Below are positions 29,074-44,918 of a DNA stretch of 64,000 bases, one piece after another. The position numbers were made by a program, and so were the translations under genes. Within the stretch, counting starts at the first letter, position 1. Each line of letters starts with the position of its first letter. The notes under the pieces are model-generated. The model saw nothing but the letters and a program-made list of their open reading frames with translations. It was not told the origin of the DNA and searched no databases. The stretch spans positions 62,001-126,000 of the IMG/VR virus record IMGVR_UViG_3300023313_000001. One strand, given 5' to 3'.

Positions 29074-30072
29074 ATGAACATTATTGAAAAAGTCCAGGGA
29101 TCCGCTACTAGTATAAGTTATAGTGACATCACACACCTGGAGCAAACGTTTCGCCAAAAAGGGTTAGGAAAGTTTCCTGAAAACATCTTGGTTCAAGGGA
29201 TCAATTATCACTATCATGAATCTACTAACTATGGTTGGGAAGATTTGATTCAAGCAAAAAAGAAAGCTATATCTATTTTTACAGTAACACCATCCAAAGA
29301 TAACTTAGCCAGATTTAAGCAATTTGAGACAGAGGATGCAGATGATGTGAACCATCCAAAACGACGATTAGTGTTAATGTGGGATGTCAATCGAGACATG
29401 AAAATTGTTCCTACTGCTGCCAGATTTATGACAAGATATCGTGAGATGCATGTCTCTTCACATGGATTTAATGAAAGTATAGAGTTAGGATTTACTGGAC
29501 AAATTGTAATTAATAATATCAACGGAAACCAACCAATTCCGTGTAAAATAGATACAGGAGCAGATATGTGCTCATTGCATGCAGAGAATGTAGATATTCA
29601 AAATGGTTCTGTAACATTCATTATTAACGGAAAACAGTATAGAATGCCAGTGTCTGGGTCTCAAACAGTAAAGCAAGCTGATAGCAATCAGGAAACAAGA
29701 CCCACAGTGAAGTTTGATATAGAGCTGTCTGGTCAGACTATTTCGGGTGTGGAGTGTAATCTTAATGACCGTACTGGAATGTCCCCTATGTTGGTTGGTA
29801 AGAATTTGTTAGCTAAGGGTGATTTTATCATCAATACAAACTTAACTGAAGGGTACGTAGAACCTCCGATGACAGAAGATGATTGGTCTCATATTACTGC
29901 ATTGTTGGAGCATGTGACAGCTCCAGAACCAACCCATGTATCGAATGTTCACCAAGAAGATATTGATAATATTTTACATTATATGTTAGAGACTGATTGT
30001 TCTATGAAAGATTTGATTTATTATATTCAATTGAATGCTATAACCACACTAAATGAAGATGTGACATATTAA
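29074..30072 (+). CDS. retropepsin-like aspartic protease (RimK-associated type) with N- and C-terminal extensions
   Basis: CKIDTGADMCSLHA and LNDR...PMLVGKN.L motifs. Confidence 0.75.
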   Translation: MNIIEKVQGSATSISYSDITHLEQTFRQKGLGKFPENILVQGINYHYHESTNYGWEDLIQAKKKAISIFTVTPSKDNLARFKQFETEDADDVNHPKRRLVLMWDVNRDMKIVPTAARFMTRYREMHVSSHGFNESIELGFTGQIVINNINGNQPIPCKIDTGADMCSLHAENVDIQNGSVTFIINGKQYRMPVSGSQTVKQADSNQETRPTVKFDIELSGQTISGVECNLNDRTGMSPMLVGKNLLAKGDFIINTNLTEGYVEPPMTEDDWSHITALLEHVTAPEPTHVSNVHQEDIDNILHYMLETDCSMKDLIYYIQLNAITTLNEDVTY

Positions 30073-30680
30073 TGAATAAGTCTCCATTCGTGGTGTTAGA
30101 TAAATTTATATCTCCATTATTATGTGAGGAGATTGTAGACGAAGTTGGATTCGCTCCTGCAGACTACGATCCAGATAGTAAGCGAGTATCTCCACAATCA
30201 TCATATGACGAAGAATTTGAAAAGATTATTTTCGAGCAGGTAACTCCATATATTCCGTCACTGGAAGAGTATTATGAGTTTAAATATAAAGGAACAGAAC
30301 GAGTAGTATTCGAACGATACCAACAAGGTGCATATCGTCAACCTCAATGTGAAAGTAGCGAATTTTTAACTAACCGTTGGGTTAAAACTAAATTGAGAGA
30401 TTTTTGTTGTGTGCTGTTTTTATGTGATTATAATGATCAACCGCCCTTTGATGATGAATTTGAATGTTACGGTGGAAAGCTGGAATTTATAAATCATCAG
30501 TTTGGATTTAATCCAACTAGAGGTACTATGATTGTATATCCTAGTGATCCTAGATTTACCAACGCTACCACTGAAATATTTGCTGGATGTTTATATCAAG
30601 TTAGACTCCACATCGCTGCAGATACTCCCTACATATACAATCCTAAACAATTTCCTGGTAACTATACAACGTGGTTTTAA
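30072..30680 (+). CDS. 2OG-Fe(II) oxygenase-fold protein with degenerate metal ligands
   Basis: ERYQQG, LFLCDY, YGGKLEF, PTRGTMIVYPS fit the fold; HxD reads QCE and the distal His reads N. Confidence 0.7.
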   Translation: MNKSPFVVLDKFISPLLCEEIVDEVGFAPADYDPDSKRVSPQSSYDEEFEKIIFEQVTPYIPSLEEYYEFKYKGTERVVFERYQQGAYRQPQCESSEFLTNRWVKTKLRDFCCVLFLCDYNDQPPFDDEFECYGGKLEFINHQFGFNPTRGTMIVYPSDPRFTNATTEIFAGCLYQVRLHIAADTPYIYNPKQFPGNYTTWF

Positions 30681-30689
30681 CAGCATCAT

Positions 30690-31601
30690 ATGAGAAAGCT
30701 GACGACTGAAGAGTTTATAGCTAAAGCTGATGTCACACACCATGGCAAGTACATTTACGACTCAGTAGTATACACTAAAAGTACATCAAAAGTCGCTATA
30801 ATATGTCCAAAACATGGAACGTTTAATCAACGAGCAAGTGCACATTTGCATGGGAGTGGATGTTTGGAATGTGGTGGATGTAAACAGAGTAGTACTACTG
30901 AGTTCATTGCTAAATCCGAAGTAATTCATTCAAATAAATACAATTATACTCTAACCAAATATATCAATACTCATTCTAAAGTGAATATTACATGCGATAT
31001 CCATGGAACATTCAGTCAGAGACCTAACGACCATCTAAAGGGGAATGGATGTCCTCAGTGCTGTGCTAATGTCAAATTGTCTACTTCAAGCTTCATTACC
31101 AAATCTCGTCAAGTACATGGAGATAGATACGATTACAGTAACTCAGTATATCAATCCAACAGTTCACCCATTATCATTACCTGTTCCATTCATGGTGATT
31201 TCCTTCAACGACCCAGCGTGCATTTGGACGGATGTGGCTGCTCATACTGCAATAAAGTTGGAGGATATAGTAAAGAAAAACTCACATCATATCTGACGTT
31301 AGGGCAACGAATGGGAAGTTTGTACCTGGTGTTGCTCTCCAGTAACGACGAACAGTTCTACAAAGTTGGGATATCCTCCACTGTTAGTCATAGGTTAACA
31401 TACATGTCTTCTACATATACTGTTGAGACAATTAATATAGTTAATATGATGCTAATAGATGCATTCAATCTGGAGCAAAAAATATTATCAATGTTCACTC
31501 CATACTATCCTACTAACAAATTTGGTGGCCACACAGAATGCTTGGTGTTAACCGATGATGATGTAACTAACGTTATGAAGATAATGACCTGTTATGCTTA
31601 G
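30690..31601 (+). CDS. free-standing homing endonuclease-like protein, family A (3 repeats)
   Basis: Three ICPKHG.F.QR...HL.G.GCxxC repeats; LYLVLL...FYKVGIS...HTEC. Confidence 0.75.
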   Translation: MRKLTTEEFIAKADVTHHGKYIYDSVVYTKSTSKVAIICPKHGTFNQRASAHLHGSGCLECGGCKQSSTTEFIAKSEVIHSNKYNYTLTKYINTHSKVNITCDIHGTFSQRPNDHLKGNGCPQCCANVKLSTSSFITKSRQVHGDRYDYSNSVYQSNSSPIIITCSIHGDFLQRPSVHLDGCGCSYCNKVGGYSKEKLTSYLTLGQRMGSLYLVLLSSNDEQFYKVGISSTVSHRLTYMSSTYTVETINIVNMMLIDAFNLEQKILSMFTPYYPTNKFGGHTECLVLTDDDVTNVMKIMTCYA

Positions 31602-31647: not shown

Positions 31648-31655
31648 TATAAATA
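31648..31655 (+). promoter_or_regulatory. T4-like late promoter
   Basis: TATAAATA upstream of the fibre/collagen operon. Confidence 0.7.
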
Positions 31656-31715: not shown

Positions 31716-34628
31716 ATGATTGTAGACGGTATTAATCTCATCGATGGGGTGATCAAGAACGCTGCTGTAGAATCCGGCATAACTCTTCCGCTCACTAACC
31801 TAGATACAGGACGTTTATTTTATCTGTCACAAATTGACGGGATTCATTCCCCAGGTCTGTACGTGTACAATGGTACTGATTGGGAAACATCTGGTCAAGT
31901 TGGCGATATTACTGGCGTAGTTGCTGGTACAGGATTAACTGGTGGTGGTAACACTGGATCAGTTCAATTAGATATCGACCCAGCGGTCGTTGCTACTATT
32001 GCAGTAACAGATAATTTAAATTCAACAAAAGTGAATAAAACAGGGGATCTCATGTCTGGAGCGTTAGACATGGGTACGAACGGAATTGTCAACCTATCAA
32101 GTCCCACATTGAGTACGGATGCTGCTAATAAGCAGTATGTTGATGCTGCATTGGGTACAGTGGATTTATCAGGTAAAGTTAGTATAGCTGGCGATACCAT
32201 GACAGGATTTTTATGGTTCCAGGCTGGTGTTGGATTGTATTGGTCGGACAGTAATTTAACAGTGCTACCAGATGCGAGTAGTGCGGGAGGCTTAGTCGTT
32301 GCTACCAGTGTAGCAGCAGCGATTCACCGGTTTGTCGTAGCTGGGGTGGACACTCTGAAAATATCACAAACTGCTGTTACTGTGGCTCCAGGAGTAGACT
32401 TAATATTAAATACAACTCCTGTATCAGATCAACATGCAGCAAATAAATTATACGTCGATAATGCTGTACTTGGGGTGGATTTATCATCACGAGTTGCAAA
32501 AACTGGCGATTCCATGACTGGGTCATTATCGTTTCAATCAGGTACTGGTTTATCTTGGCCATCAAACAGTGTGACATTGTTGCCTGATGGTGGTTCCGGT
32601 TTGGTAATTTCAACAAACTCAGTAACAGCTTCTCATAAATTTGCGGTGGGTGGTTCCGTTCAAATGGCCATCTCGTTAACTGACGTGTCATTAGCTGCTG
32701 GTGTGAGTCTTACGCTTGCACAAGATCCTACACTAAACCTACAAGCTTCGACAAAGCAATACGTTGATAATGCAGTGCTAGCAGTAGATCTATCGTCACG
32801 TGTGGCTAAAGCTGGTGATGCAATGACAGGCAGTTTGAGTATGGGTACCAATAGTGTGAGCTTTACAGGTGTTGGTGCTGCGGGGGTTGGTGGAGAGCTT
32901 TCCTTTGTAGGGGCTTCAACTACAGTATACGCTCCGTCTGTGGCTGGAGGTTTGACGTTTGACGCGCCCGCAACTGGATCATTCGTCAATGTAGTCAATG
33001 CTAATGCTATCACTACAGTTGATACTGGCGGATTAACTATTAACTCAGGGAATATTACACTAAATGCAGATCCAACTCTAGCGTTACAAGCTGCTACCAA
33101 ACAGTATGTAGATGGTAGTGTGGTGAATATCACTGGTAAGGTGAATGTTGCAGGCGACACAATGACTGGTGCATTAATTCTTAATGCGGATCCTTCAGTT
33201 GCATTAGGAGCTGCTACTAAACAATATGTTGATGCTGCTGAAACAGCTAGCGTTACTAAAGCTGGCGACACAATGACTGGTGCATTAATTCTTAATGCGG
33301 ATCCTTCAGTTGCATTAGGAGCTGCTACTAAACAATATGTTGACAGTGGAATTGGAGGAATCAATTTATCAGGTCTAGTTGCTAAAGCTGGCGACACAAT
33401 GACTGGTGCATTGACGCTTAATGCTGATCCTATCAACGATTTACATGCTGCTACAAAAAGATATGTTGATGGTGTTGCTACAGGACTAGATGTAAAAGCC
33501 TCTGTGCGTGTAGCTACCGTTGCTAATATTACATTATCAGGAGCACAAACAATTGATGGCGTCGCTGTAATAGCTGGTGACAGAGTTCTTGTAAAAGATC
33601 AATCGATTGGATCACAGAATGGTATATATGATGCTGCATCTGGTGCTTGGATTAGATCTTCGGATGCCGATAATACCCCAGCTAATGAAGTAACGTCTGG
33701 AATGTTCACTTTTGTAGAAGAAGGTTTATTGAATGCGAGTTCTGGTTGGGCATTAGCGACTGCAGATCCAATCACATTGGATGTTACATCATTATCGTTC
33801 TCCCAATTTAGTGGAGCTGGACAAATTACCGCTGGAACGGGTATATCAAAATCTGGTGATACACTAAGTTTAGATACTGGCAACAGTAGAAACGTAGACC
33901 ACTCAACAATCGATATGATCGCTGGCACCGGTATGACTGGTGGTGGTACTATCACAGGTAACAGAACATTTAATGTGGTCGGTGGGAATGGTATTGTAGC
34001 TAACGCTAATGATATAGCATTGGATACAGGTAATGTTCGTAATGTATCTCACAGTGCTGTGTCTATAGTTGCTGGTAGTGGTTTATCTGGTGGTGGTGAT
34101 ATTACTGCATCCAGAACACTCAATATCGGTGCTGGGACAGGTATTACTGTAGCTGCTAATAGTATTGCGTTTGACACAATATTTGGTGATGCAAGATATA
34201 TTCAACAAGCTGAAAATGCTGCATCTGCTACCAAATTAAATACAGCACGCACCATTTCATTGGGTGGCGATCTATCTGGTAGTGCATCATTTGATGGAAC
34301 TGCCAATATTACGATCACAGCTACTGTAGATAATACTGGGACTTATACTGATAACAGAACTACTAATAAAACGTTAGTTAGCCTGGAGACTGTATTTGTT
34401 AATACCTCTGCCGGAATTCTAACAATGACGTTGCCAGGAGCTCCTACATTGGGAGATCAAGTTACTATCATAGATTTGAAAGGCACGTTTGGAACCAACA
34501 AATGTATTGTTGGTAGAAATGGTGGAGTTATCATGGGTCTAACACAAAACATGGATATTACTACAAATAACGCTAGTGTTACACTCATCTACAGTAATGC
34601 TGCTGATGGCTGGAGAATTAAGCAATAA
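31716..34628 (+). CDS. long fibre-like virion protein
   Basis: Repeated GDTMTG.L...A.K.YVD shaft units, GLDVKASVR domain, C-terminal domain resembling T4 gp34 N-terminal repeats. Confidence 0.75.
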   Translation: MIVDGINLIDGVIKNAAVESGITLPLTNLDTGRLFYLSQIDGIHSPGLYVYNGTDWETSGQVGDITGVVAGTGLTGGGNTGSVQLDIDPAVVATIAVTDNLNSTKVNKTGDLMSGALDMGTNGIVNLSSPTLSTDAANKQYVDAALGTVDLSGKVSIAGDTMTGFLWFQAGVGLYWSDSNLTVLPDASSAGGLVVATSVAAAIHRFVVAGVDTLKISQTAVTVAPGVDLILNTTPVSDQHAANKLYVDNAVLGVDLSSRVAKTGDSMTGSLSFQSGTGLSWPSNSVTLLPDGGSGLVISTNSVTASHKFAVGGSVQMAISLTDVSLAAGVSLTLAQDPTLNLQASTKQYVDNAVLAVDLSSRVAKAGDAMTGSLSMGTNSVSFTGVGAAGVGGELSFVGASTTVYAPSVAGGLTFDAPATGSFVNVVNANAITTVDTGGLTINSGNITLNADPTLALQAATKQYVDGSVVNITGKVNVAGDTMTGALILNADPSVALGAATKQYVDAAETASVTKAGDTMTGALILNADPSVALGAATKQYVDSGIGGINLSGLVAKAGDTMTGALTLNADPINDLHAATKRYVDGVATGLDVKASVRVATVANITLSGAQTIDGVAVIAGDRVLVKDQSIGSQNGIYDAASGAWIRSSDADNTPANEVTSGMFTFVEEGLLNASSGWALATADPITLDVTSLSFSQFSGAGQITAGTGISKSGDTLSLDTGNSRNVDHSTIDMIAGTGMTGGGTITGNRTFNVVGGNGIVANANDIALDTGNVRNVSHSAVSIVAGSGLSGGGDITASRTLNIGAGTGITVAANSIAFDTIFGDARYIQQAENAASATKLNTARTISLGGDLSGSASFDGTANITITATVDNTGTYTDNRTTNKTLVSLETVFVNTSAGILTMTLPGAPTLGDQVTIIDLKGTFGTNKCIVGRNGGVIMGLTQNMDITTNNASVTLIYSNAADGWRIKQ
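33153..33343 (+). repeat. 80-bp identical direct repeat, 111-bp period, in the fibre gene
   Basis: 33153-33232 equals 33264-33343; partial third copy near 33390-33412. Confidence 0.9.
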
Positions 34629-34640
34629 GGGAGCAGTGAT

Positions 34641-35438
34641 ATGAGTAATTGGTTAAGTTATGCACGATCTGGAAATAAAGGTGTCAAAGGAGCCAAAGGG
34701 GTTAATGGTGTCAAAGGAGCCAAAGGCTTGCTGGGAGATAAAGGAGATCCTGGAGACTTAGGTGTTTCTGGTGGTCCTGGTCCTAGTGGTGATATTGGGG
34801 TTCAAGGCGCTCAGGGTCCTGCTAATAATACAACAGGTCCACAAGGCGCTCAGGGTCCACAAGGTCCACAGGGTGGAATCGGTGCTCAAGGCGGGACAGG
34901 GGCAACTGGTCCCGTTGGTGCTCAGGGTCCGTTAGGTCCTGCAGGATCGCCAGGCCCAACAGGGTCAAAAGGAATCGCCGGTTCTACTGGTGCCACTGGT
35001 ACTAAAGGAAGTGCTGGAGGTGCTGGAGCAAAAGGTGCAGCTGGTCAGAAGGGCTCCACTGGAGTTACTGGTCCAGGAGGGTCTCAAGGCATTCAAGGTG
35101 CCCAAGGTGCCCAAGGGGTAGCAGGTCAGAAAGGTTCGATTGGAGCGACAGGGGCTGGTGGGTCTACCGGAGCTGTTGGTCAAAAAGGTGGAGCAGGTCC
35201 AACAGGTAACACTGGTGCTAAGGGATCTGCTGGTGCTAAGGGGTCGGACGGTCCAGCTGGAGCACAAGGTGCTCTTGGCATTCAGGGCGATCTAGGTGGT
35301 GCTGGTACGCCAGGGCCAAATGGTATTCCAGGAGCTACAGGATCGAAAGGTCAGAAAGGTCAGAAAGGTGCTCTTGGAGCTCAAGGGACTAAAGGGGCTA
35401 AAGGTCAGAAAGGTCAGAAAGGTGCCCCAGGTGTCTAA
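34641..35438 (+). CDS. collagen-like protein 1 (about 83 Gly-X-Y triplets)
   Basis: Continuous Gly-X-Y from residue 11 with a single NNTT interruption. Confidence 0.9.
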   Translation: MSNWLSYARSGNKGVKGAKGVNGVKGAKGLLGDKGDPGDLGVSGGPGPSGDIGVQGAQGPANNTTGPQGAQGPQGPQGGIGAQGGTGATGPVGAQGPLGPAGSPGPTGSKGIAGSTGATGTKGSAGGAGAKGAAGQKGSTGVTGPGGSQGIQGAQGAQGVAGQKGSIGATGAGGSTGAVGQKGGAGPTGNTGAKGSAGAKGSDGPAGAQGALGIQGDLGGAGTPGPNGIPGATGSKGQKGQKGALGAQGTKGAKGQKGQKGAPGV

Positions 35439-35464
35439 TATGAATAACACAGAAGGATATAAAT

Positions 35465-36670
35465 ATGAGTAATTTTGAAGATTTTAATTATAGAACTTCG
35501 GGCGTTATTGGTGACCAGGGAGTCGCTGGGGTTCTGGGTGCTAAGGGTACCAAAGGTACCAAAGGTACCAAAGGTACTAAAGGTGTTCCTGGAATAATTG
35601 GACCCAAAGGATTAAAAGGAGTTGCAGGCCCTCAAGGTGTTGTAGGTGTAAATGGGTCTACTGGGCCAGTTGGTATAGCCGGAGATATTGGTCAAATAGG
35701 TCCAACTGGTGCTACTGGTGCTACTGGTCCTACTGGGCCTGCCAGTGTTGTTACTGGTCCACCTGGTACGGTGGGAGCTGTTGGTCAGCCAGGAGATAAA
35801 GGAGCAGTAGGTGCTCAGGGACCAGTAGGTCCAACTGGTGCTACTGGTCCTCAAGGTGTGAAGGGGACCAAAGGGTTACCTGGTCCTGGAGGTCCTACCG
35901 GTGCTCAAGGCGCTCAAGGTTCTACTGGTGGAGTAGGGTCTAAGGGAAATAAAGGAACAGCTGGAGATAAAGGAAACAAAGGAACTACTGGAAGTAAAGG
36001 TGATAAGGGTGTACTTGGCCCTCAAGGGACTGCAGGATTATCAGGTCCGTCGGGAGCCACTGGATCTCAAGGAATTGCAGGCCCTCAAGGTCCAGCAGGT
36101 CCCAAAGGTATTAAGGGCATTAAAGGTATAACTGGATCCCCTGGAGCCACTGGGACACCAGGAGCCAAGGGTGCAAAAGGTCCTAAAGGAGCTCCTATAA
36201 TAGGAGATCCAGGAGCTCTAGGACAGAAAGGACAGAAAGGTGTAAAAGGACAGCCTCAAGGTGGGTTAACCGCAGGACAGACCATTTCATCTAATGTTGC
36301 AAACACAAATGCTGTGGTTGTATCAAACGTCACTTTCAATTCTAACGGGACTACAACGTTTGCACTTAACAGCAATGCGACTACACCTGGTCCTAACTGG
36401 ACAACCGATGCTGGTGGATCTGCATACAACATATCTTGGACTGTGGGAGCTGCAGTGGGTACACGCTCTCCTACATCTAACGCCAGCAATGTGTCAATGG
36501 CTGCATCACAAACGTTCAGTTCAACAGACACCCTCACAGGGGCAGTAGCTTCCACGTCCACATGGACTATCACGCTAACCCATGTATTGTCTGGAAATAC
36601 TCAAGTATGGACTGCAAACACATCTGCTGAAAAACTTGGTGGTGGTGGTGGTGGTGCAATAATATTATAA
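35465..36670 (+). CDS. collagen-like protein 2 (about 82 triplets + C-terminal beta-rich domain)
   Basis: Gly-X-Y with SVVT and II interruptions, then about 135 aa Thr/Ser-rich domain ending GGGGGGAIIL. Confidence 0.9.
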   Translation: MSNFEDFNYRTSGVIGDQGVAGVLGAKGTKGTKGTKGTKGVPGIIGPKGLKGVAGPQGVVGVNGSTGPVGIAGDIGQIGPTGATGATGPTGPASVVTGPPGTVGAVGQPGDKGAVGAQGPVGPTGATGPQGVKGTKGLPGPGGPTGAQGAQGSTGGVGSKGNKGTAGDKGNKGTTGSKGDKGVLGPQGTAGLSGPSGATGSQGIAGPQGPAGPKGIKGIKGITGSPGATGTPGAKGAKGPKGAPIIGDPGALGQKGQKGVKGQPQGGLTAGQTISSNVANTNAVVVSNVTFNSNGTTTFALNSNATTPGPNWTTDAGGSAYNISWTVGAAVGTRSPTSNASNVSMAASQTFSSTDTLTGAVASTSTWTITLTHVLSGNTQVWTANTSAEKLGGGGGGAIIL

Positions 36671-37296
36671 TGGGTATTATGTTGTTACAAAATGTGTTCA
36701 GTGATAGTGACTATGTGATTAGTTTAGCTGAACACATGGGATTTGAGCCAGCTCCAGTAATATCTCAATGTGTTACTGATGCTAGTGGGAATATACTTCC
36801 GATGAAAGATTTATTAGAGGTTAACCATCCAGATCCCTCATTCTTCAACGCAGATAAGGTGTTCATCCATCGAGGCAGTTCTGAGTTTGATGAAATTATT
36901 ACAGTATGTGACAACATATTAACAACAGTATTTTCTGAATACGATGTTGAACTAGTAACAGATGATTGGCCAGGGACATATAAGTTAGATTATGTTTCTG
37001 TTGTTAGGTACAATTGTGGTGGCTTTTTTCACAACCACTCAGACTTGCTAGTTCAACCAGGCGGGAATTTTCGGAGTTTTACAATAATTGCTTATATGAG
37101 CGATTTTGCGGGTGGTGATTTGGTTTTTGCAGATCATGATATTAAACTATCCCCACAGAAAGGAGATGTTGTAGTTTTTCCTTGTGGTGAACAATACAGA
37201 CACGAGTCTACTGTGGTTACTGAGGGGGTTAAATATGCTCTTACCTTATGGCCATTGGTAAACACAGAATTAAAATTAAAAGTAGGGACTAATTAA
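36670..37296 (+). CDS. 2OG-Fe(II) dioxygenase, prolyl-4-hydroxylase-like
   Basis: Intact HxD (HNHSD), distal His (YRHES), 2OG-binding Lys (GVKY), RY..GG.F and GGDLVF motifs. Confidence 0.85.
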   Translation: MGIMLLQNVFSDSDYVISLAEHMGFEPAPVISQCVTDASGNILPMKDLLEVNHPDPSFFNADKVFIHRGSSEFDEIITVCDNILTTVFSEYDVELVTDDWPGTYKLDYVSVVRYNCGGFFHNHSDLLVQPGGNFRSFTIIAYMSDFAGGDLVFADHDIKLSPQKGDVVVFPCGEQYRHESTVVTEGVKYALTLWPLVNTELKLKVGTN

Positions 37297-38078
37297 TGAG
37301 TAATTTAAATGATTTTTTAATCGCTGGAGCTAAAGGTGATATTGGTGCAGTGGGTGCTGTTGGACTTGTTGGACTTGTTGGTGGAATTGGAGACCTTGGG
37401 AATGGTGGCATTACCGGACCACAGGGATCTGCAGGTTCTCAAGGATCGATTGGTCCTCAGGGTTTGATAGGTGCTCAAGGTCCTCTGGGTGCTCAAGGTA
37501 TTAAGGGAGTTAAGGGGTTAAAGGGAACTGTCACTGGACCTAAGGGTAATAAGGGGTTTGTTGGAGGAGCAGGAGCTCCCGGCACACAAGGTCCTCAAGG
37601 CCCACAAGGAGCGAAAGGTGTTGCAGGAGCTATAGGTACAGTGGGTGCTGTTGGAGCTCAAGGTCCTACAGGTACTACTGGAGTAGCTGGTGCTTCTGGT
37701 GCAATTGGTGCAATTGGTGCTACTGGTGCTACTGGTGCTATAGGTACTACTGGTGGATTAGGGGCTAAAGGTGTTGCAGGAGTTAAAGGGACTAAAGGGG
37801 CTGCAGGAACGCCTGGGGCTAAGGGGTTGAAGGGAGCTAAAGGAGCTCAAGGTGGTCCTGGTGGCGCTGGAGCTAAAGGTCCAGATGGAGCTGTGGGATC
37901 TATTGGTATCACAGGGGCTATAGGAACTGCTGGTCCTCAAGGGGCTCAAGGACCTGTTGGTATAAATGGGTTAGGTGGACCACCTGGTACAAATGGTGCT
38001 ACTGGAGCATTTGGTGACAATCATATCGGGGTTAAAGGAACCAAAGGTCAAAAAGGTCAGAAAGGTATTACAGGTTAA
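37296..38078 (+). CDS. collagen-like protein 3 (about 82 triplets)
   Basis: Gly-X-Y from residue 11 with T and HI interruptions. Confidence 0.9.
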   Translation: MSNLNDFLIAGAKGDIGAVGAVGLVGLVGGIGDLGNGGITGPQGSAGSQGSIGPQGLIGAQGPLGAQGIKGVKGLKGTVTGPKGNKGFVGGAGAPGTQGPQGPQGAKGVAGAIGTVGAVGAQGPTGTTGVAGASGAIGAIGATGATGAIGTTGGLGAKGVAGVKGTKGAAGTPGAKGLKGAKGAQGGPGGAGAKGPDGAVGSIGITGAIGTAGPQGAQGPVGINGLGGPPGTNGATGAFGDNHIGVKGTKGQKGQKGITG

Positions 38079-38093
38079 CATCACACACGATTT

Positions 38094-38118
38094 AAAAGGT
38101 TCCATATGGAACCTTTTT
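38094..38118. terminator. bidirectional intrinsic terminator closing the fibre/collagen operon
   Basis: AAAAGGTTCC-ATAT-GGAACCTTTTT. Confidence 0.85.
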
Positions 38119-38133
38119 ATGTCTGATTCAAAT

Positions 38134-38162
38134 TTGACAATCTACGCGTAATATATTATACT
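38134..38162 (+). promoter_or_regulatory. sigma70-type early promoter
   Basis: TTGACA-17 nt-TATACT. Confidence 0.85.
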
Positions 38163-38192
38163 CAGTTTTTAATAATACACTGAGGAAATGAA

Positions 38193-38486
38193 ATGTCACA
38201 ACTTGAACACCATGGTTTAATTTTACCTAGCAGTCCTGAAGATCGAAAACGTTTGATGGGTGGAATAGACGAGATTATAAATTGTCTAGCTCAAATGAAT
38301 TCTCAACGAGAGGCCAAGAAAGAAATTATAGAGCATCTATACGAAGAATTTGGTATTGACAAAAAACTGTTAAATAAAGTTGCGGCAACTTTATTTAAGG
38401 ATAATTTTCAACAGGTTGCAGCTGAAAATGAAGATTTTGAATTGTTAGTAGAAACTTTGCGAACTAAACAACAAGCGTCTACCTAA
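38193..38486 (+). CDS. dsbA: T4 DsbA-like dsDNA-binding protein
   Basis: 97 aa helical protein with KEII..L.EEFGIDKK..NK.....F.DNF pattern typical of phage DsbA. Confidence 0.65.
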   Translation: MSQLEHHGLILPSSPEDRKRLMGGIDEIINCLAQMNSQREAKKEIIEHLYEEFGIDKKLLNKVAATLFKDNFQQVAAENEDFELLVETLRTKQQAST

Positions 38487-39065: not shown

Positions 39066-39836
39066 ATGAAAATTCACAGTAAACAGTTCGGAGAAGGAAT
39101 CGTTCAAATAGAGACTGGTTCAGTTTTACCTAGAGGCACCCCATTTGACGATGGTCGAATATTTTTCCTCCAAGAGATTGTTGATAAAAATCCCAAAGGA
39201 TTTTACGTATACGATGCAACTAAAGCACGTTGGACGTTGATCAACGAACATAGAAGTTTAGAGTTGACACATGTATGTACTACTGATGGAATCACATATA
39301 GTCTAACTGCAGAAACTGGAGCCACTGGTAATACTTACGCAACAGTGGTGTTATCCCCTGATAACACTCATGCTAGAATTACTGTGAAGGGAAGTGGATC
39401 TGGTGAGGCAGAGGGGTTTATATTTAGAAATGCTGATATTGGACATGATGTGATTCGCGCTGATAATGAATCGTTTGAATGGATGGGTAATAAGGTGTGG
39501 CATGATAAAAATTTGCATCCCATCAAGTTTCAACCAAGAGAGCGTGCCATTGATGTAAGAGTAAATCACTTGGCTCAAGGTCAAGAAACTTTGTTTGTTA
39601 ATACTACTGCTGGTGAAATTATAGTGAAATTGCCTCATTTAATCACAGTAGGGGATCGAGTTACAATCATAGATGATGCTGGAACTTTTGGGGACATTAA
39701 TTGTATAGTTAATGGACGAGGCCAAAACATAAATGGAATGGGCGACGATTACATCCTAAACAAGAGCAACACAGCGTATACCTTCGTATATCAAAACGCT
39801 AATCGTGGATGGCGTGTTTTAAAGCAACTGAGTTAA
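39066..39836 (+). CDS. virion fibre-associated adaptor protein
   Basis: N-terminal module and C-terminal gp34-like domain both shared with ORF 31716; AATAAATA at 39035-39042. Confidence 0.6.
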   Translation: MKIHSKQFGEGIVQIETGSVLPRGTPFDDGRIFFLQEIVDKNPKGFYVYDATKARWTLINEHRSLELTHVCTTDGITYSLTAETGATGNTYATVVLSPDNTHARITVKGSGSGEAEGFIFRNADIGHDVIRADNESFEWMGNKVWHDKNLHPIKFQPRERAIDVRVNHLAQGQETLFVNTTAGEIIVKLPHLITVGDRVTIIDDAGTFGDINCIVNGRGQNINGMGDDYILNKSNTAYTFVYQNANRGWRVLKQLS

Positions 39837-39841
39837 TATCC

Positions 39842-39849
39842 TATAAATA
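39842..39849 (+). promoter_or_regulatory. T4-like late promoter
   Basis: TATAAATA upstream of the tail fibre gene. Confidence 0.7.
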
Positions 39850-39877: not shown

Positions 39878-42667
39878 ATGAAAATTGATGGTCTAAGTTT
39901 TATTAACGATAGTAGAATGACTGATGCTGTAGTAGAGTCTGGTACAACGTTACCTGTTGCTAACGCACAAGATAACGGTCGGTTGTTCTTCCTTACACAA
40001 ACTCAAGGAGCTAATACTCCTGGGTTATACCTATATAATGCAAGTAGTGTATCGTGGGCCATAGTCAATGATAATACTGCAGTTAATGCAGTAAATACAG
40101 ATACTCTGGACAATCTTGACAGCCTCGATTTCGTTCGGTCTACTGGCTTCGTAAATCAAATCATAAATGGTCAAAAAACATTGACTGGTAGATTAACTAG
40201 TGATTTGACAGTTGCTGGGGTAAATTACAGGGCATATGATACTGCCAACAATAACAGATTCGATATCTCAGTGACAACTGGATCCGCATCTAGTTCTGGA
40301 GCTTACCTAAATTCCACATGGAATACTGGTGGAACTGGTAATATACATCTCCAGTATGCTAGTAATACCAAATTAAAGATACACAGCACAGGCATAGATG
40401 TTACTGGAACTATCAGTGCATCTGAGCCCATCACAGTATCTTCTGCAAACGATTCCATGTTAAGGTTTAATGTTCCATCTGGAAGCGCCAATGAGTGGAG
40501 TTATATATCTTGGTACGGTTCTGATGGTGCTAGAGATTCGTACTTTGGAATTAATTCTGCTGGATTTCCTATATGGGCTAAGGACGGTGGTACTATTGTT
40601 ACATTATCAGATACCGGAATATCGATGACTGGTAACATCTCAGTTACTGGAGCAGTTGATGGTAGAGACATTGCTGTGGATGGTAGCAAATTAGATACCA
40701 TTGCATCCAGTGCAAATAATTACACTCATCCAAACTATTCTTCAACAAATCAATCATTAACAAACGATAACGTAGTGGGTTCCATAACTACAAATGCCAC
40801 TGGACATGTGACAGGAATGACCAATAGGCAGTTACTTCCTGAAGATTTGGGTGGAACTAGGCTGGTAACAGGTGGAGGAGGATGGGGAAGCTTCTTATCA
40901 GTTGGTGGTGGTGGTGTATCCTATAATCAAAGCAACAAAACAGGTCATATTCAGATCAAACTACCAGTTCTATGGTCTAGTCATATGCTACAGTTTCATG
41001 TGGACGTGTTCGATTATATAGCAGACAAGTTAGTATCCTTCCATATCGCAGGATATAACTATGCTGGGTCATTATCCTGGAACAGAACATCAGTTCACCA
41101 AACTGGTGGAATTAGTGACATTCCTGTATATTTTGGTGACGATGGAGTTAACGCCTGCATATGGATAGGATCTCCAGCGTATGTATGGCAGTATCCCAAA
41201 GTTATTATCAGAGATGTACTCGTAGGGTTTACTACGGTAACCAACGCTACCTGGAAAGATGGTTGGAGCGTGACTGTTAACACCACACCACGAATTACTA
41301 CTAATGTAACTCATTCTAACCCTCAAGGATTTGGTCCTCGTAAAACAGATACATCTGCATTTGCAGGTCCGGTGACTACTGTGGGCAAATTGACGGTGGG
41401 CACCGAATTATCTAGTCCTGTTATGTACACTGGGACTTCATCTTCTTCCAATGGTTATTTCTATTCTGATATTCCTGGAAGAACATCCTTTCGCAACGGA
41501 GATTTTTACATACAGAATACTGTTATTAACTCTTTTAACTATGCCACTAACCAGTATGTAGGTAACGTTAGTGGATCTACTATTAGATTTAGAGGAAACA
41601 CTTTAACTGCTGATAACTGGGGGATTAACACTAGTGGAGTAGCTACCTTTGCAGGAGCTATAGTTGGTGATACGATTAACGCAGGAGATGTTGCTGCAAC
41701 TGGTGGTGGTGTTGGATTGCAAATTAAATATAATGGTGCAGATATACTAAACTCATTTGGTGCGTCGTATTCTACTGGCGATACATTTATTGGGAGAGGG
41801 TTGCGTAGTTCAACTACGACTGCGGCTACATATACATCGACAACTGCAACTAATGCAACAAGAGGGTTAGTTGAAGTTAGCGACAAGATAATATTTAGGA
41901 ATGCACCAATTTCTAATGCTACTGTAGGTTCTGTTGTATCTACTACAGAAAGATTTAGAATTGATGCCAGTGGGAATTTGACCTTGACAGGGACTGTTGA
42001 TGGAAGAAATGTTTCAGCAGATGGCAGTAAATTGGATACTATAGCATCCAATGCAAACAACTATACTCATCCAAATTACTCAGCAACAAATATCAATACA
42101 TCTGGGGCGACGGTAGTTGACATTATTACAACAAATTCGACAGGGCATGTTACTACGTTAGGCACACGTACTTTAACAGCAGCAAATATTGGTGCAGCCA
42201 CTAGTGGTCATACCCATACTACAATTACCCCTGTGGATGAATCTGTGGACACAATTTGCTATCCTGCCTTTTTCAATACTGCTACTGGCAACCAGGCTAT
42301 TAAAACAGGTACAAATTTAACATTCAACGCTTCGTCAGGCCAGTTGACAGCTACTATCCTAAATAGTTCAGATAGAGCGCTAAAGAAAAATATAACTGAC
42401 TATGTCGGTTATACCACATCTGGGATCCAAGCAAAATTGTATGAGTTTAAAGATTCATCTAAAGGAGGCCCTGGGATAAAGGTAGGGTATATCGCTGATG
42501 AGGTTGAATTAGTCTTACCAGAGGCAGTATCTGGTACTCCAGGCAACCAAGCGGTGGATTATACGATGGTTCACACTACAAAAATTGCAGAGTTGGAACG
42601 TCTTGTGGAACGTCAACAACAACAGATAGACAATTTAATAAAGGTATTAAATGACTCAATTAACTAA
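39878..42667 (+). CDS. tail fibre with C-terminal intramolecular chaperone (peptidase S74)
   Basis: SSDRALKKNI cleavage motif, GYIADEV, terminal coiled coil; beta-rich shaft. Confidence 0.85.
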   Translation: MKIDGLSFINDSRMTDAVVESGTTLPVANAQDNGRLFFLTQTQGANTPGLYLYNASSVSWAIVNDNTAVNAVNTDTLDNLDSLDFVRSTGFVNQIINGQKTLTGRLTSDLTVAGVNYRAYDTANNNRFDISVTTGSASSSGAYLNSTWNTGGTGNIHLQYASNTKLKIHSTGIDVTGTISASEPITVSSANDSMLRFNVPSGSANEWSYISWYGSDGARDSYFGINSAGFPIWAKDGGTIVTLSDTGISMTGNISVTGAVDGRDIAVDGSKLDTIASSANNYTHPNYSSTNQSLTNDNVVGSITTNATGHVTGMTNRQLLPEDLGGTRLVTGGGGWGSFLSVGGGGVSYNQSNKTGHIQIKLPVLWSSHMLQFHVDVFDYIADKLVSFHIAGYNYAGSLSWNRTSVHQTGGISDIPVYFGDDGVNACIWIGSPAYVWQYPKVIIRDVLVGFTTVTNATWKDGWSVTVNTTPRITTNVTHSNPQGFGPRKTDTSAFAGPVTTVGKLTVGTELSSPVMYTGTSSSSNGYFYSDIPGRTSFRNGDFYIQNTVINSFNYATNQYVGNVSGSTIRFRGNTLTADNWGINTSGVATFAGAIVGDTINAGDVAATGGGVGLQIKYNGADILNSFGASYSTGDTFIGRGLRSSTTTAATYTSTTATNATRGLVEVSDKIIFRNAPISNATVGSVVSTTERFRIDASGNLTLTGTVDGRNVSADGSKLDTIASNANNYTHPNYSATNINTSGATVVDIITTNSTGHVTTLGTRTLTAANIGAATSGHTHTTITPVDESVDTICYPAFFNTATGNQAIKTGTNLTFNASSGQLTATILNSSDRALKKNITDYVGYTTSGIQAKLYEFKDSSKGGPGIKVGYIADEVELVLPEAVSGTPGNQAVDYTMVHTTKIAELERLVERQQQQIDNLIKVLNDSIN

Positions 42668-43256
42668 CGCTGTACTAGATACATTATTCGAACCAAGAGG
42701 GGCAACAACTAAGCGTGCTGATATTGGAATTCAGACAAATGGTATTGATATATCTAACAGATATATGCAACCTAGTCAGGGCGGAACAGCAACTGCAACA
42801 GCAACAAATATAATGAGCAATGGATTGGATATTGCCACATTGTTTACTCAAATTGGTACTGTAATCAATCAATCTATTACGTGGGTTGGTTCTATATCAC
42901 TGAGTGCTACAGGGACCACGTTGGCTATTGTGAATTTCTCATTAGGGTCAGATGGTACTACTGCACAAACAGGCACCGGCACTACAGTTGGTGATTGGTT
43001 GACTACAGTGGGTGCAGGGAACGGGTCATTATATGAATGTCGTGCTTCCAGTATTTCCGGTAGTGTGTTGAGCAGTGGCCCCACAGTGTTTACTCCAATC
43101 AGCTCCAATGTGTTGTTTAGTTTAAATGGTAACTCTACTAAGTCCACATCATTTAATGTTGATATAAGAGAAATAGCAAACCCAGCGAATACGTTCACGC
43201 GTGCTTGTACATTGAGTATAACAGTTACCGGTGGCGGCTTCGGAGGGGGGCTTTAA
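42651..43256 (+). CDS. tail-fibre-associated (tip/adhesin-like) protein
   Basis: Overlaps the fibre stop; Thr/Ser-rich beta domain, Gly-rich C-terminus. Confidence 0.5.
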   Translation: MTQLTNAVLDTLFEPRGATTKRADIGIQTNGIDISNRYMQPSQGGTATATATNIMSNGLDIATLFTQIGTVINQSITWVGSISLSATGTTLAIVNFSLGSDGTTAQTGTGTTVGDWLTTVGAGNGSLYECRASSISGSVLSSGPTVFTPISSNVLFSLNGNSTKSTSFNVDIREIANPANTFTRACTLSITVTGGGFGGGL

Positions 43257-43319: not shown

Positions 43320-44918
43320 TTGAGTTATATTTCAGCTTGGAGAAAATTAAATGACGTGATAGTTTGGGAGCGAGATCCAGACGGGAAGCGTTATAAAACT
43401 ACCTACCCAGGAATATTTGAGTTTTACTCCAAACATGTAGGTGGTTCGTATGCCAATATATATGGTGACAACTTAATTAAACACGAATTTAAAACGTGGT
43501 TTGATATGCACTCAGCTAAAAAACAATTCACTGAACGAGCGGAATTGTTATATGAGTCAGACATATTACCAGAAATGAAAGTACTGTCAGAACACTATTA
43601 TCAGGCAGAACCTCCTAAACTTCACTATACACTGTGGGATATCGAAGTTGATTATGACCCATCCCTAGCATATGCAGATACAGCAATTGATAATGCAGTT
43701 GCTCCCATAAACGCAGTAGCAATACATCATAAATGGAGTGGTGAATCCATAGTAATAGCTGTTCCTCCACCATCATGGACTGGATCATTAAAAGAATCTA
43801 CCGAGAAACTTAGTGATCTAGCTACAGAAACCAATACAACTATACTACTAGTAGCAACAGAGGCAGATTTGATAACCACATTGTTGGATGAATTTGAGGG
43901 CTCTGATGTTATTAGTGGGTGGAATTCATCCTGGTTTGACACCCCATATTTAGCGAAACGAGTATTATCAGTGCTGGGACCAAAAGCGTTTAACCGACTA
44001 TCATTTGCTGGAGCAGGCAAACCTTCTTTTAGAACAGTTGAAGTTTTTGGACAAGAGCGTATTACAATCGATTTAAGTGGGCGCATTAGTTGGGATTACA
44101 TGGAACTGTTTAAAAAATTCGAAATGAATGAACGCCCATCATATAGCTTAGAGGCAATCTCTAATGAAATACTTCCAGACTTACCTAAGCTGGAATACGA
44201 CGGAACTTTGCATGAATTGTATAATAACGATTTCGAACATTTCATACGATATAATATTCGTGATACCGAAGTGTTGGCAGGGTTCGAAGATAAACTTGGG
44301 TATCTAGCATTAGCTAACGTATTGTACCATTCATCTTGTGGACAACCAAATCAGATCTTTGGGACCATACGGTTAGCTGATCACGCCATCATTAATTATT
44401 GTCACAACGAATTAAATCGTAAAGTTCCAGATTGGGACATGTATAAGCAGGATGGTCGTATTGCAGGTGCAATGGTACTTACCCCCCAAATAGGACTACA
44501 TCAGAATATAGGGAGTATTGATATCACAAGTCTGTATCCGTCTGCAATTAGATGTATTAACATATCTCCAGAAACTCTCATTGGACAAATGAATGGTACG
44601 TTAGATATGGATGATCGAGCTAAGCATTCTGCATGGGATAGTGTGTATCGTAGTGACACTAGGGATCCAATTACATTAATCTACGACAATGGGGTAGATG
44701 GGTGGTCCGGTGCTGAAACTCATACTGGAAAGGAATGGCAGCAAATTTTAGTTGATCGGAAGTGGGCAATCTCTGGATACGGAACAATATTCCGACAGGA
44801 TGTACAGGGAATGATTCCTGCGGTATTAACAGAGTGGTTTGGTCAACGCAAAAAATATAAAAAACTAATGGTAGAAGCAAAAGACTCAGCTGAAGCCATC
44901 CTCGATAAGTATCGATGA
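43320..44918 (+). CDS. polB: family B DNA polymerase, N-terminal part (3'-5' exonuclease + motif A); TTG start
   Basis: WDIEVD, SGWNSSWFDTPY, YNIRDTE, SIDITSLYPSAI, WFGQRKKYKK; AGGAG RBS. Confidence 0.92.
   Translation: MSYISAWRKLNDVIVWERDPDGKRYKTTYPGIFEFYSKHVGGSYANIYGDNLIKHEFKTWFDMHSAKKQFTERAELLYESDILPEMKVLSEHYYQAEPPKLHYTLWDIEVDYDPSLAYADTAIDNAVAPINAVAIHHKWSGESIVIAVPPPSWTGSLKESTEKLSDLATETNTTILLVATEADLITTLLDEFEGSDVISGWNSSWFDTPYLAKRVLSVLGPKAFNRLSFAGAGKPSFRTVEVFGQERITIDLSGRISWDYMELFKKFEMNERPSYSLEAISNEILPDLPKLEYDGTLHELYNNDFEHFIRYNIRDTEVLAGFEDKLGYLALANVLYHSSCGQPNQIFGTIRLADHAIINYCHNELNRKVPDWDMYKQDGRIAGAMVLTPQIGLHQNIGSIDITSLYPSAIRCINISPETLIGQMNGTLDMDDRAKHSAWDSVYRSDTRDPITLIYDNGVDGWSGAETHTGKEWQQILVDRKWAISGYGTIFRQDVQGMIPAVLTEWFGQRKKYKKLMVEAKDSAEAILDKYR

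What the first reader, a model, noticed from the sequence alone, without database searches (positions are those of the whole stretch)
34641..38078. Collagen cassette with a dedicated, translationally coupled 2OG-Fe(II) hydroxylase
Seen: three Gly-X-Y genes surround a P4H-like dioxygenase with intact HxD...H...K residues. The enzyme is joined by TAATG stop/start overlaps on both sides (36668-36672, 37294-37298). The unit follows a late promoter (31648) and a fibre gene and ends at a terminator (38094). Known: animal collagens need Pro/Lys hydroxylation, whereas most prokaryotic collagen-like proteins are regarded as unhydroxylated. Inference: the phage post-translationally modifies its own collagen-like virion fibres, a eukaryote-like collagen maturation pathway in a virus of bacteria.
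Basis: partly seen in the sequence, partly recalled or inferred. Interest (0 to 1): 0.85.

Follow-up and report, generated by a model that had tools for sequence, protein, structure and literature searches.

The report
Phage fibre-tip protein with coupled hydroxylase
An uncultured T4-like phage has three equal-length collagen-like fibre genes around an intact prolyl-hydroxylase-type enzyme, but in related phages that enzyme's constant partner is a small non-collagen fibre-tip domain, so it more likely matures a fibre tip than collagen as such.

Summary
Three Gly-X-Y genes (83, 82 and 82 triplets) flank a 208-aa 2OG/Fe(II) oxygenase. TAATG stop/start overlaps sit on both sides of the enzyme. 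The unit lies in a late fibre operon that ends in a hairpin.

The enzyme has an intact H123/D125/H178/K188 set. Its confident model matches prolyl hydroxylases best; the top hit is the Chlorella-virus collagen P4H.

The enzyme has only eight recognisable orthologues among 1.8 billion proteins. In all eight loci the gene just upstream, with overlapping stop and start, is not collagen. It is a small protein with a roughly 130-aa C-terminal domain and a Gly-rich tail. The non-collagen C-terminus of colB is a divergent copy of that domain, and the window holds a canonical copy elsewhere (42651-43256).

The collagens also look "unhydroxylated" in composition: Pro fills 17% of X positions but only 7.7% of Y positions, and Lys fills 26% of Y positions.

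Best reading: a conserved pair of fibre-tip domain and P4H-type hydroxylase, fused here to a collagen stalk. Collagen hydroxylation remains possible but is not the conserved function. The target residue is unknown.

The parts
31648..31655 (+). T4-type late-promoter motif TATAAATA upstream of the fibre operon
   Evidence: It lies 60 nt before the ATG at 31716. The motif count in the window is not above chance, so it is a plausible promoter, not a proven one.
31716..34628 (+). 970-aa tail-fibre-like protein, first gene of the operon
   Evidence: Matches PHROG tail-fibre and virion structural families (phrog_11518, E 2e-35, and others). No Pfam hit. It lies 12 nt upstream of colA.
34641..35438 (+). 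colA: collagen-only chain with a 10-aa N-peptide and 83 Gly-X-Y triplets, interrupted once by NNTT; no globular domain
35465..36670 (+). colB: 12-aa N-peptide, 82 triplets (interruptions SVVT and II), then a 137-aa non-collagen C-terminal domain
36257..36667 (+). C-terminal domain of colB: a divergent member of the 'tipD' domain family that precedes every orthologous oxygenase. It ends in a run of six Gly followed by AIIL.
   Evidence: hhalign against a profile built without colB gives E 1.2e-5 to 3.3e-5. The score is 34.0 against shuffles of mean 10.6, sd 1.9 and maximum 20.2. The tail and the gene position match the family. No hit in Pfam, PHROG, PDB or the protein database.
36670..37296 (+). 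208-aa 2OG/Fe(II) oxygenase of the prolyl-hydroxylase fold: Fe ligands H123, D125 and H178; 2OG-binding K188
   Evidence: PF13640, E 1.8e-14. AlphaFold2 model with pLDDT 92.3. All of the top 50 Foldseek hits are 2OG/Fe(II) oxygenases, nearly all of them prolyl hydroxylases; the best is vCPH 5c5t at E 3e-11. TAATG overlaps on both sides.
37296..38078 (+). colC: collagen-only chain with a 10-aa N-peptide and 82 triplets (interruptions T and HI); no globular domain
38094..38117 (+). Terminator-like hairpin closing the operon. A strong sigma-70-like promoter for the next unit follows at 38134-38162.
   Evidence: -15.4 kcal/mol, z = -4.0; TTGACA, 17 nt, TATACT; 11 of 12 matches.
39878..42667 (+). 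929-aa fibre with a C-terminal Peptidase_S74 intramolecular-chaperone domain. The same gene type precedes tipD and the oxygenase in the orthologous loci.
   Evidence: PF13884, E 1.3e-6. TATAAATA at 39842.
42651..43256 (+). Canonical tipD-family protein (201 aa) ending in a Gly-rich tail (GGGFGGGL). It is not followed by an oxygenase here.
   Evidence: An HMM built without any window sequence gives E 3.4e-22. It is 54% identical to the oxygenase partner in L086. Sequence read.

Best explanation
The enzyme is one half of a conserved two-gene phage module. The other half is a small fibre-tip protein, whose roughly 130-aa C-terminal domain ('tipD') ends in a Gly-rich tail. The P4H-fold 2OG/Fe(II) protein hydroxylase is translated directly after it through overlapping stop and start codons.

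In this phage the tip domain has been fused to an 82-triplet collagen stalk to give colB. The pair is flanked by two collagen-only chains of the same length.

Proposed mechanism:
1. Late transcription yields one mRNA carrying the fibre gene, colA, colB, the oxygenase and colC.
2. Coupled translation delivers the enzyme alongside nascent colB.
3. The enzyme uses Fe(II) (ligands H123, D125, H178), 2OG (K188) and O2 to hydroxylate a residue of its partner protein before the fibre assembles. By fold analogy the residue is most likely a proline.

What is shown: the gene anatomy, the intact active site, the prolyl-hydroxylase fold, and the conserved tipD-oxygenase synteny.

What is inferred: that the partner is the substrate, that the residue is Pro, and that the collagen triplets are at most a secondary target acquired in this lineage.
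For: Rarity and active site. An all-against-library phmmer search finds only eight full-length orthologue clusters at 31-44% identity. H123, D125 and H178 are invariant, and position 188 is always K or R.

Conserved partner.
- In all eight orthologous loci the gene immediately upstream carries the tipD domain.
- Stop and start overlap in all nine loci, counting an in-frame GTG in L082.
- In the four longer loci the order is S74 fibre, then tipD, then oxygenase.
- tipD is absent from 114 loci (1.09 Mb) carrying more distant phage PF13640 oxygenases.

colB as a family member. Its C-terminus matches the tipD profile at hhalign E about 1e-5, roughly 12 sd above shuffles. It shares the Gly-rich tail.

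Collagen and tipD together elsewhere. In L082 a fibre with collagen runs is followed by a separate tipD gene. colB therefore looks like a fusion of two parts that are neighbours in another phage.

Fold. The model has pLDDT 92.3. All of the top 50 PDB matches are 2OG/Fe(II) oxygenases and nearly all are prolyl hydroxylases: vCPH, Cr-P4H, PPHD with EF-Tu, PHD2, BaP4H and C-P4H-II.
Against: - No residue, and no Pro, is conserved across all tipD domains. No target site can be named.
- colB's tipD-like domain is very divergent. A plain HMM built without it does not find it.
- The Gly-run codons lie 10-20 nt before the oxygenase start and could partly serve as a Shine-Dalgarno sequence rather than a protein signal. 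However, the tail persists in ORF 42651-43256, which has no downstream oxygenase.
- The window's canonical tipD gene is not next to the oxygenase.
- Only eight orthologous loci exist, and three of them are 1.6 kb or shorter.
- Collagen-like runs are somewhat enriched near the family: 2 of 8 loci against 3 of 114, Fisher p = 0.034.
- There is no biochemical evidence.
Confidence: 0.5

Rival explanations
1. One reading: in this phage the enzyme is a dedicated collagen hydroxylase. It converts Pro in X-Pro-Gly, or Lys in X-Lys-Gly, to the hydroxylated form in all three chains, and so stabilises or cross-links the collagen fibres.
For: - The enzyme sits between collagen genes with TAATG coupling on both sides.
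- The best structural match is a viral collagen P4H, and the best sequence matches in the PDB include P3H1, vCPH and B. anthracis P4H.
- The chains offer 17 X-Pro-Gly tetrapeptide sites (19 Y-position prolines in all) and 64 X-Lys-Gly sites. Y-position Pro falls at the same offsets in the chains: 213 and 219 in colA and colB, 219 in colC. About 0.02 triple coincidences are expected by chance.
- Collagen-like runs recur near 2 of 8 orthologues, against 3 of 114 distant loci.
Against: - None of the eight orthologues has a collagen gene as an immediate neighbour. The conserved partner is non-collagen.
- Pro is X-biased (17% against 7.7% in Y), as in unhydroxylated prokaryotic collagens (PMC3368898).
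- Similarity to the lysyl hydroxylase LH3 is negligible (E 0.2).
- The enrichment of nearby collagen can be explained by the family residing in fibre modules.
Confidence: 0.25
2. The oxygenase-fold protein acts mainly as a stoichiometric fibre assembly factor or tip-bound component. It would occupy the position that Tfa or gp38 chaperones hold after fibre-tip genes, with catalysis secondary or absent.
For: - Its position immediately downstream of a fibre-tip gene, with a strictly overlapping stop and start in 9 of 9 loci, implies roughly equimolar synthesis. That is unusual for a catalyst.
- From established knowledge, animal P4H and P3H complexes also act as collagen chaperones.
Against: - The complete Fe/2OG-binding set is conserved across orthologues that are only 31-44% identical. 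This argues for retained catalysis.
- There is no sequence similarity to Tfa or gp38 families in Pfam or PHROG.
- A clearly degenerate paralogue in the same window (30072-30680) shows what loss of catalysis looks like in this phage.
Confidence: 0.12
3. The enzyme acts on something other than fibre proteins, such as a host protein like EF-Tu or a ribosomal protein, a nucleic acid, or a small molecule. Its place in the fibre operon would then reflect only late expression.
For: - P4H-like oxygenases of unknown role are widespread in phages outside structural modules.
- PiuC-type and EF-Tu-modifying enzymes are among the closest matches.
Against: The tight, overlapping synteny with tipD is conserved across phages with different replication modules: T4-like here and in L084, Pol A-type in L086. 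That is hard to explain without a functional link to tipD.
Confidence: 0.08

Closest known systems
PBCV-1 viral collagen prolyl 4-hydroxylase (vCPH, PDB 5c5t) and algal Cr-P4H
   Same: Both are small, single-domain, virus- or microbe-encoded 2OG/Fe(II) enzymes of the P4H fold with an HxD...H...K set. vCPH is the best Foldseek match (E 3e-11, TM 0.61/0.69) and the profile match is E 5e-7.
   Different: Sequence identity is only about 17%. vCPH belongs to a virus of eukaryotic algae and acts on Pro-rich repeats. Here the conserved genomic partner is a non-collagen fibre-tip domain in tailed phages, and no activity has been shown.
Mimivirus collagen-like proteins with the L230 lysyl hydroxylase/glycosyltransferase (from established knowledge)
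   Same: A virus encodes both collagen-like proteins and a 2OG oxygenase that modifies them. The chains here are rich in X-Lys-Gly (26% of Y positions).
   Different: There is no meaningful similarity to LH-type domains (LH3, E 0.2). There is no glycosyltransferase domain. The 2OG-binding residue is Lys, as in P4Hs, rather than the Arg of LH and P3H enzymes (the last point is from memory).
Bacterial P4Hs: Bacillus anthracis P4H (3itq, 5hv0) and Pseudomonas PPHD with EF-Tu (4iw3)
   Same: Same superfamily and size. These are prokaryotic enzymes that hydroxylate a peptidyl proline in a specific partner protein.
   Different: Those are cellular genes. This family was found only in phage and metagenome contigs and in none of the 185,579 GTDB genomes scanned. 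It is locked to a fibre-tip gene.
Phage fibre-tip gene followed by an assembly chaperone or adhesin (T4 gp37/gp38, Mu/P2 fibre/Tfa)
   Same: Same gene order and tight coupling: a small protein is encoded immediately after the distal fibre gene.
   Different: The downstream protein here is an intact oxygenase, not a member of the Tfa or gp38 families. No Pfam or PHROG match to those families was found.
Unhydroxylated prokaryotic and prophage collagen-like fibre proteins (Scl1/2, E. coli prophage EPclPs; PMC3368898)
   Same: Same Gly-X-Y repeats, X-biased Pro, and Lys/Gln/Thr-rich Y positions. Matches to PHROG tail-fibre families and NCBIfam Scl/Lcl models.
   Different: colA and colC have no trimerisation domain at all. 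The three separate genes have equal triplet counts, and an oxygenase is encoded among them.

Membership tests
P4H superfamily / Pfam PF13640 (2OG-FeII_Oxy_3) | Profile score above the curated threshold | tested here: met
   54.9 bits against a cut-off of 27, E 1.8e-14. Also matches phrog_61 '2OG-Fe(II) oxygenase', E 1.2e-22.
P4H superfamily / Pfam PF13640 (2OG-FeII_Oxy_3) | HxD...H iron-binding triad plus a basic 2OG-binding residue 10 positions after the distal His | tested here: met
   H123, D125, H178 and K188 are present. The first three are invariant and position 188 is K or R in 9 of 9 orthologues.
P4H superfamily / Pfam PF13640 (2OG-FeII_Oxy_3) | Double-stranded beta-helix fold resembling solved prolyl hydroxylases | tested here: met
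   AlphaFold2 model with pLDDT 92.3 and pTM 0.89. All of the top 50 Foldseek PDB hits are 2OG/Fe(II) oxygenases, nearly all of them prolyl hydroxylases, with TM 0.5-0.7.
P4H superfamily / Pfam PF13640 (2OG-FeII_Oxy_3) | 2OG- and Fe(II)-dependent hydroxylase activity | not testable with these tools
   Needs an enzyme assay.
Collagen prolyl 4-hydroxylase (functional class) | Consistent association of orthologues with collagen substrates | tested here: not met
   None of the 8 orthologous loci has a collagen gene adjacent. Only 2 of 8 have any run of 8 or more triplets on the contig.
Collagen prolyl 4-hydroxylase (functional class) | Substrate rich in Y-position Pro (X-Pro-Gly) | tested here: not met
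   Y-position Pro in 19 of 247 triplets (7.7%) against X-position Pro in 17%. Human collagens have about 35% Pro in Y (PMC3368898).
Collagen prolyl 4-hydroxylase (functional class) | Formation of 4-hydroxyproline in Gly-X-Y repeats | not testable with these tools
   Needs MS/MS after co-expression.
Collagen lysyl hydroxylase (PLOD/LH3, mimivirus L230) | Sequence or fold relationship to the LH catalytic domain | tested here: not met
   LH3 scores only E 0.2 with the family profile and is absent from the top 50 Foldseek hits.
Collagen lysyl hydroxylase (PLOD/LH3, mimivirus L230) | X-Lys-Gly sites present in the putative substrate | tested here: met
   64 of 247 Y positions are Lys, and Lys never occupies X.
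Collagen triple-helix repeat proteins (PF01391) | Long uninterrupted Gly-X-Y runs and a Pfam match | tested here: met
   83, 82 and 82 triplets with 1-2 short interruptions each. E values from 1e-29 to 1e-34.
Collagen triple-helix repeat proteins (PF01391) | A non-collagen trimerisation or registration domain, usual for prokaryotic collagens | tested here: inconclusive
   colB has a 137-aa C-terminal domain. colA and colC have only 10-aa N-peptides and 1-2 residues at the C-terminus.
tipD domain family (unnamed; defined here) | Profile similarity of colB residues 265-401 to the domain that precedes orthologous oxygenases | tested here: met
   hhalign E 1.2e-5 and 3.3e-5, probability 72-81%. 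Score 34.0 against a shuffle maximum of 20.2. A plain hmmsearch without colB in the model does not reach E 1, so the copy is divergent.
tipD domain family (unnamed; defined here) | Gly-rich C-terminal tail and a position immediately upstream of the oxygenase with stop/start overlap | tested here: met
   colB ends in six Gly followed by AIIL, and the other loci show a similar Gly run followed by three or four mostly hydrophobic residues.
Tail fibre assembly chaperones (Tfa, gp38) | Sequence membership of a Tfa or gp38 family | tested here: not met
   Only oxygenase families are hit in Pfam, PHROG and NCBIfam.

The most novel reading that the evidence does not exclude
Tailed phages of several lineages mature a fibre-tip (receptor-binding) protein by enzymatic hydroxylation, using a dedicated P4H-type oxygenase translated in step with it. 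In this phage the same enzyme also serves a collagen fibre built from three different chains of equal length (colA, colB and colC, a heterotrimer with a single tip domain). That would make it a hydroxylated, heterotrimeric collagen in a virus of bacteria.
Probability: 0.2. Interest if true: 0.85.

Novelty: new variant of a known kind. Interest (0 to 1): 0.6.

Why it matters
Phage fibres are generally thought to need only chaperones, not oxidative enzymes, to mature. A conserved pairing of a fibre-tip protein with a hydroxylase would add a new kind of step to phage assembly. It could also explain why some fibres fail when expressed alone.

P4H-like genes are very common in marine phages and their roles remain unknown. 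This family offers a defined candidate substrate to test.

If the collagen triplets are hydroxylated as well, a 208-aa enzyme that works in a bacterial cytoplasm would be useful for making hydroxylated recombinant collagens. The accepted view that phage collagens are never hydroxylated (PMC3368898) would then need revision.

The three equal-length chains also raise the testable possibility of a heterotrimeric prokaryotic-type collagen.

Tried and rejected
Searches that led nowhere:
- A word-indexed protein search with the enzyme alone found only itself. With the family profile it recovered two members.
- Scans of IMG/VR, JGI metagenome contigs and GTDB genomes with the family alignment returned no further orthologues, only distant PF13640 genes.
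- A single-sequence AlphaFold2 run on the enzyme failed (pLDDT 28). It was redone with a 104-sequence alignment.
- The tipD domain has no Pfam, PHROG or PDB match.
- colB's C-domain has no relatives in the 5.8-billion-protein database.
- tipD alignments were too variable for pattern-based locus searches.
- Megablast of the cassette against GenBank phages found nothing.

Ideas considered and rejected:
- Recent duplication of the three chains. In-register identity (0.11-0.15) is no higher than out-of-register identity.
- TATAAATA at 35458 as an internal promoter for colB. It overlaps the ATG, so it is more likely an AT-rich spacer.
- Lysyl hydroxylase identity. LH3 scores only E 0.2.
- Oxygenase fusions as Rosetta-stone evidence. 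The multi-domain hits P0010-P0015 are tandem oxygenases and contain no tipD domain.

Literature: searches found no report of a phage collagen-oxygenase or fibre-oxygenase pair.


Full report
**What is there**

The window is part of a 229.5-kb IMG/VR contig. It comes from a deep-branching T4-superfamily phage. It carries topoisomerase II subunits, ribonucleotide reductase, a gp41-like helicase and DNA polymerase. Its best topoisomerase II match to any isolated phage is about 34% identity.

At the finding's coordinates five tightly spaced plus-strand ORFs follow a TATAAATA motif at 31648:
- a 970-aa fibre-like protein (31716-34628)
- colA (34641-35438)
- colB (35465-36670)
- a 208-aa oxygenase (36670-37296)
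- colC (37296-38078)

The spacings between them are 12 nt, 26 nt, -1 nt and -1 nt. A 10-bp hairpin at 38094-38117 closes the unit (-15.4 kcal/mol, z = -4). A strong sigma-70-like promoter for a different gene follows.

Pfam confirms Collagen repeats in the three chains and PF13640 in the enzyme. TATAAATA is not over-represented in the window (10 found against 7.7 expected), so the promoter is plausible rather than shown.

**The enzyme**

H123-x-D125, H178 and K188 are in place. With a 104-sequence alignment AlphaFold2 gives a confident model (pLDDT 92.3, pTM 0.89).

All 50 best Foldseek matches in the PDB are 2OG/Fe(II) oxygenases, and nearly all are prolyl hydroxylases. The first is the Chlorella-virus collagen P4H (5c5t, E 3e-11). 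Then come algal Cr-P4H, the Pseudomonas EF-Tu prolyl hydroxylase, PHD2, B. anthracis P4H and human C-P4H-II.

A family profile against PDB sequences ranks as follows:

| Match | E-value |
|---|---|
| PiuC | 8e-8 |
| P3H1 | 1.3e-7 |
| vCPH | 5e-7 |
| B. anthracis P4H | 4e-6 |
| Lysyl hydroxylase LH3 | 0.2 |

It is thus an apparently active member of the prolyl-hydroxylase clade. Fold alone does not name the substrate.

**The collagens**

The three chains have 83, 82 and 82 Gly-X-Y triplets.
- Pro occupies 17% of X positions but only 7.7% of Y positions.
- Lys occupies 26% of Y positions and never X.
- Acidic residues are few, so all three chains are strongly basic.
- This X-biased Pro pattern is the one described for unhydroxylated bacterial and prophage collagens. 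Animal collagens have about 35% Pro in Y (PMC3368898).

Only colB has a globular part, 137 aa at the C-terminus. colA and colC are essentially pure triple-helix sequence with 10-residue N-peptides.

Counting from the first Gly, several features coincide between chains:
- The two-residue interruptions of colB (II) and colC (HI) fall at the same offset, 232-233.
- Both chains have GQKGQKG at offset 240.
- Y-position Pro falls at offsets 213 and 219 in colA and colB, and at 219 in colC. About 0.02 triple coincidences are expected by chance.

In-register identity is no higher than out-of-register identity, so the chains are not recent duplicates. Equal length in diverged chains suggests a shared length constraint. 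That could mean one A-B-C heterotrimer or three homotrimers of equal length. This remains unresolved.

**The decisive comparison**

The enzyme is nearly an orphan. A full phmmer scan of 1.84 billion representatives finds only eight full-length orthologue clusters, at 31-44% identity. None is in IMG/VR beyond the source contig, in the JGI metagenome set, or in 185,579 GTDB genomes.

I recovered the DNA around all eight. In every one the gene immediately upstream is not collagen. It is a small protein (190-285 aa where complete) whose C-terminal domain of roughly 130 aa forms a clear family, here called tipD. It usually ends in a short Gly run followed by three or four mostly hydrophobic residues.

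Stop and start overlap in all nine loci, counting an in-frame GTG in L082. In the four longer loci the order is: fibre with a Peptidase_S74 chaperone domain, then tipD, then oxygenase.

colB's non-collagen C-terminus is a divergent tipD domain:
- hhalign against profiles that exclude it gives E 1.2e-5 and 3.3e-5.
- Its score of 34.0 stands against shuffles of mean 10.6, sd 1.9 and maximum 20.2.
- It carries the same kind of tail (six Gly followed by AIIL) at the same place.

An HMM trained without any window sequence also finds a canonical tipD gene in the window at 42651-43256 (E 3e-22). It is 54% identical to the oxygenase partner in L086. It sits directly after the window's own S74 fibre (39878-42667), keeps a Gly-rich tail, and has no oxygenase after it.

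In L082 a 1776-aa fibre with short collagen runs is followed by a separate tipD gene. colB looks like a fusion of two such neighbours.

Neither tipD nor collagen accompanies 114 more distant phage PF13640 loci totalling 1.09 Mb. No tipD hit was found there. Three of those loci have collagen runs, all about 7.7 kb from the oxygenase.

**Interpretation**

That test comes out largely positive. The conserved functional partner of this enzyme family is the tipD fibre-tip domain. Collagen is a lineage-specific stalk.

I therefore rank highest (0.5) a module of fibre-tip protein plus dedicated P4H-type hydroxylase. The enzyme, made in step with its partner, would modify it before assembly, probably at a proline.

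Three caveats apply:
- No residue is conserved across all tipD domains, so no site can be proposed.
- The Gly codons of the tail lie 10-20 nt before the oxygenase start and may double as a ribosome-binding site. The tail also persists where no oxygenase follows.
- Only eight loci exist, three of them very short.

Rivals:
- Collagen hydroxylation in this particular phage remains a live rival (0.25). The enzyme is flanked by collagens on both sides, 17 X-Pro-Gly tetrapeptide sites (19 Y-position prolines in all) and 64 X-Lys-Gly sites exist, some Y-position Pro sites are in register, and collagen runs occur near 2 of 8 orthologues against 3 of 114 distant loci (Fisher p = 0.034). That enrichment may only reflect residence in fibre modules.
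- A mainly stoichiometric chaperone role (0.12) fits the strict coupling but not the conserved catalytic set.
- A substrate unrelated to fibres (0.08) does not explain synteny kept across phages with different replication modules.

**Comparison with what is known**

The closest known systems are:
- the PBCV-1 viral P4H
- mimivirus collagen with its lysyl hydroxylase
- bacterial P4Hs with defined protein partners
- the classical gene order of fibre gene followed by a chaperone

The enzyme meets all the testable criteria of the P4H superfamily. It does not meet the testable criteria for a collagen-dedicated P4H or a lysyl hydroxylase (see the membership table).

Literature searches found no description of a phage fibre-oxygenase or collagen-oxygenase pair. 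P4H-like oxygenases in cyanophages are listed only as genes of unknown or speculative role.

I rate this a new variant of a known kind, of moderate to high interest. It is testable by simple co-expression and mass spectrometry.

Noticed in passing
window 30072-30680 (+): A second P4H-superfamily ORF (202 aa) lies 1 kb upstream of the fibre operon. hhalign against the oxygenase alignment gives probability 97.7% and E 2e-12. However, the HxD, the distal His and the 2OG-binding Lys are all replaced, so it is probably a catalytically dead paralogue. It has no Pfam or PHROG hit.
   Followed up: partly
window 42651-43256 (+): A canonical tipD-family protein sits directly after the S74 fibre gene (39878-42667), overlapping it by 17 nt. 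It is 54% identical to the oxygenase partner in locus L086. It ends in a Gly-rich tail but is followed by the DNA polymerase gene, not by an oxygenase.
   Followed up: yes
window 34671-35435, 35501-36256, 37326-38075 (collagen regions): The three diverged chains have 83, 82 and 82 triplets. colB and colC share an interruption at offset 232-233 and GQKGQKG at offset 240. Y-position Pro falls at offset 219 in all three. This may indicate a heterotrimer or a shared length constraint. colA and colC have no trimerisation domain.
   Followed up: partly
window 43320-44918, 44922-46814, 46766-48439 (+): The DNA polymerase gene appears to be interrupted. An N-terminal polymerase ORF (phrog_262) is followed by a 630-aa homing-endonuclease ORF (phrog_3339, E 5e-126) and then another large ORF. 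A similar 602-aa endonuclease ORF (3493-5301) precedes the topoisomerase II large subunit.
   Followed up: no
window 30690-31601 (+): A 303-aa ORF has three repeats of a Cys-rich zinc-finger-like unit and a C-terminal T5orf172 domain (PF10544, E 3e-5). It is a possible mobile nuclease-like gene sitting between the dead oxygenase paralogue and the fibre operon.
   Followed up: no
window 39066-39836 (+) and 31716-34628 (+): The 256-aa ORF and the 970-aa fibre share a similar C-terminal module of about 90 aa. Both hit phrog_31104 and phrog_972, and both end in a closely similar C-terminal motif. This suggests a common attachment or tip domain used by two fibre genes.
   Followed up: no
window 38134-38486 (+): Right after the operon terminator lies a near-consensus sigma-70-like promoter (TTGACA, 17 nt, TATACT). 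It drives a 97-aa ORF matching phrog_639, a transcriptional regulator (E 2e-18). This is an early- or middle-type unit inserted between two late fibre units.
   Followed up: no
L086:2073-2642 and L082:8708-9247: Further tipD-domain genes lacking the Gly-rich hydrophobic tail occur downstream of the oxygenase in L086, and after a 1776-aa PB4_spike fibre with collagen runs in L082. The domain is therefore used more widely than the oxygenase pairing.
   Followed up: partly
window 29074-30072 (+): A 332-aa ORF has a retropepsin-like or ATP-dependent zinc protease domain (PF05618, E 7e-7). Its stop overlaps the start of the dead oxygenase paralogue.
   Followed up: no
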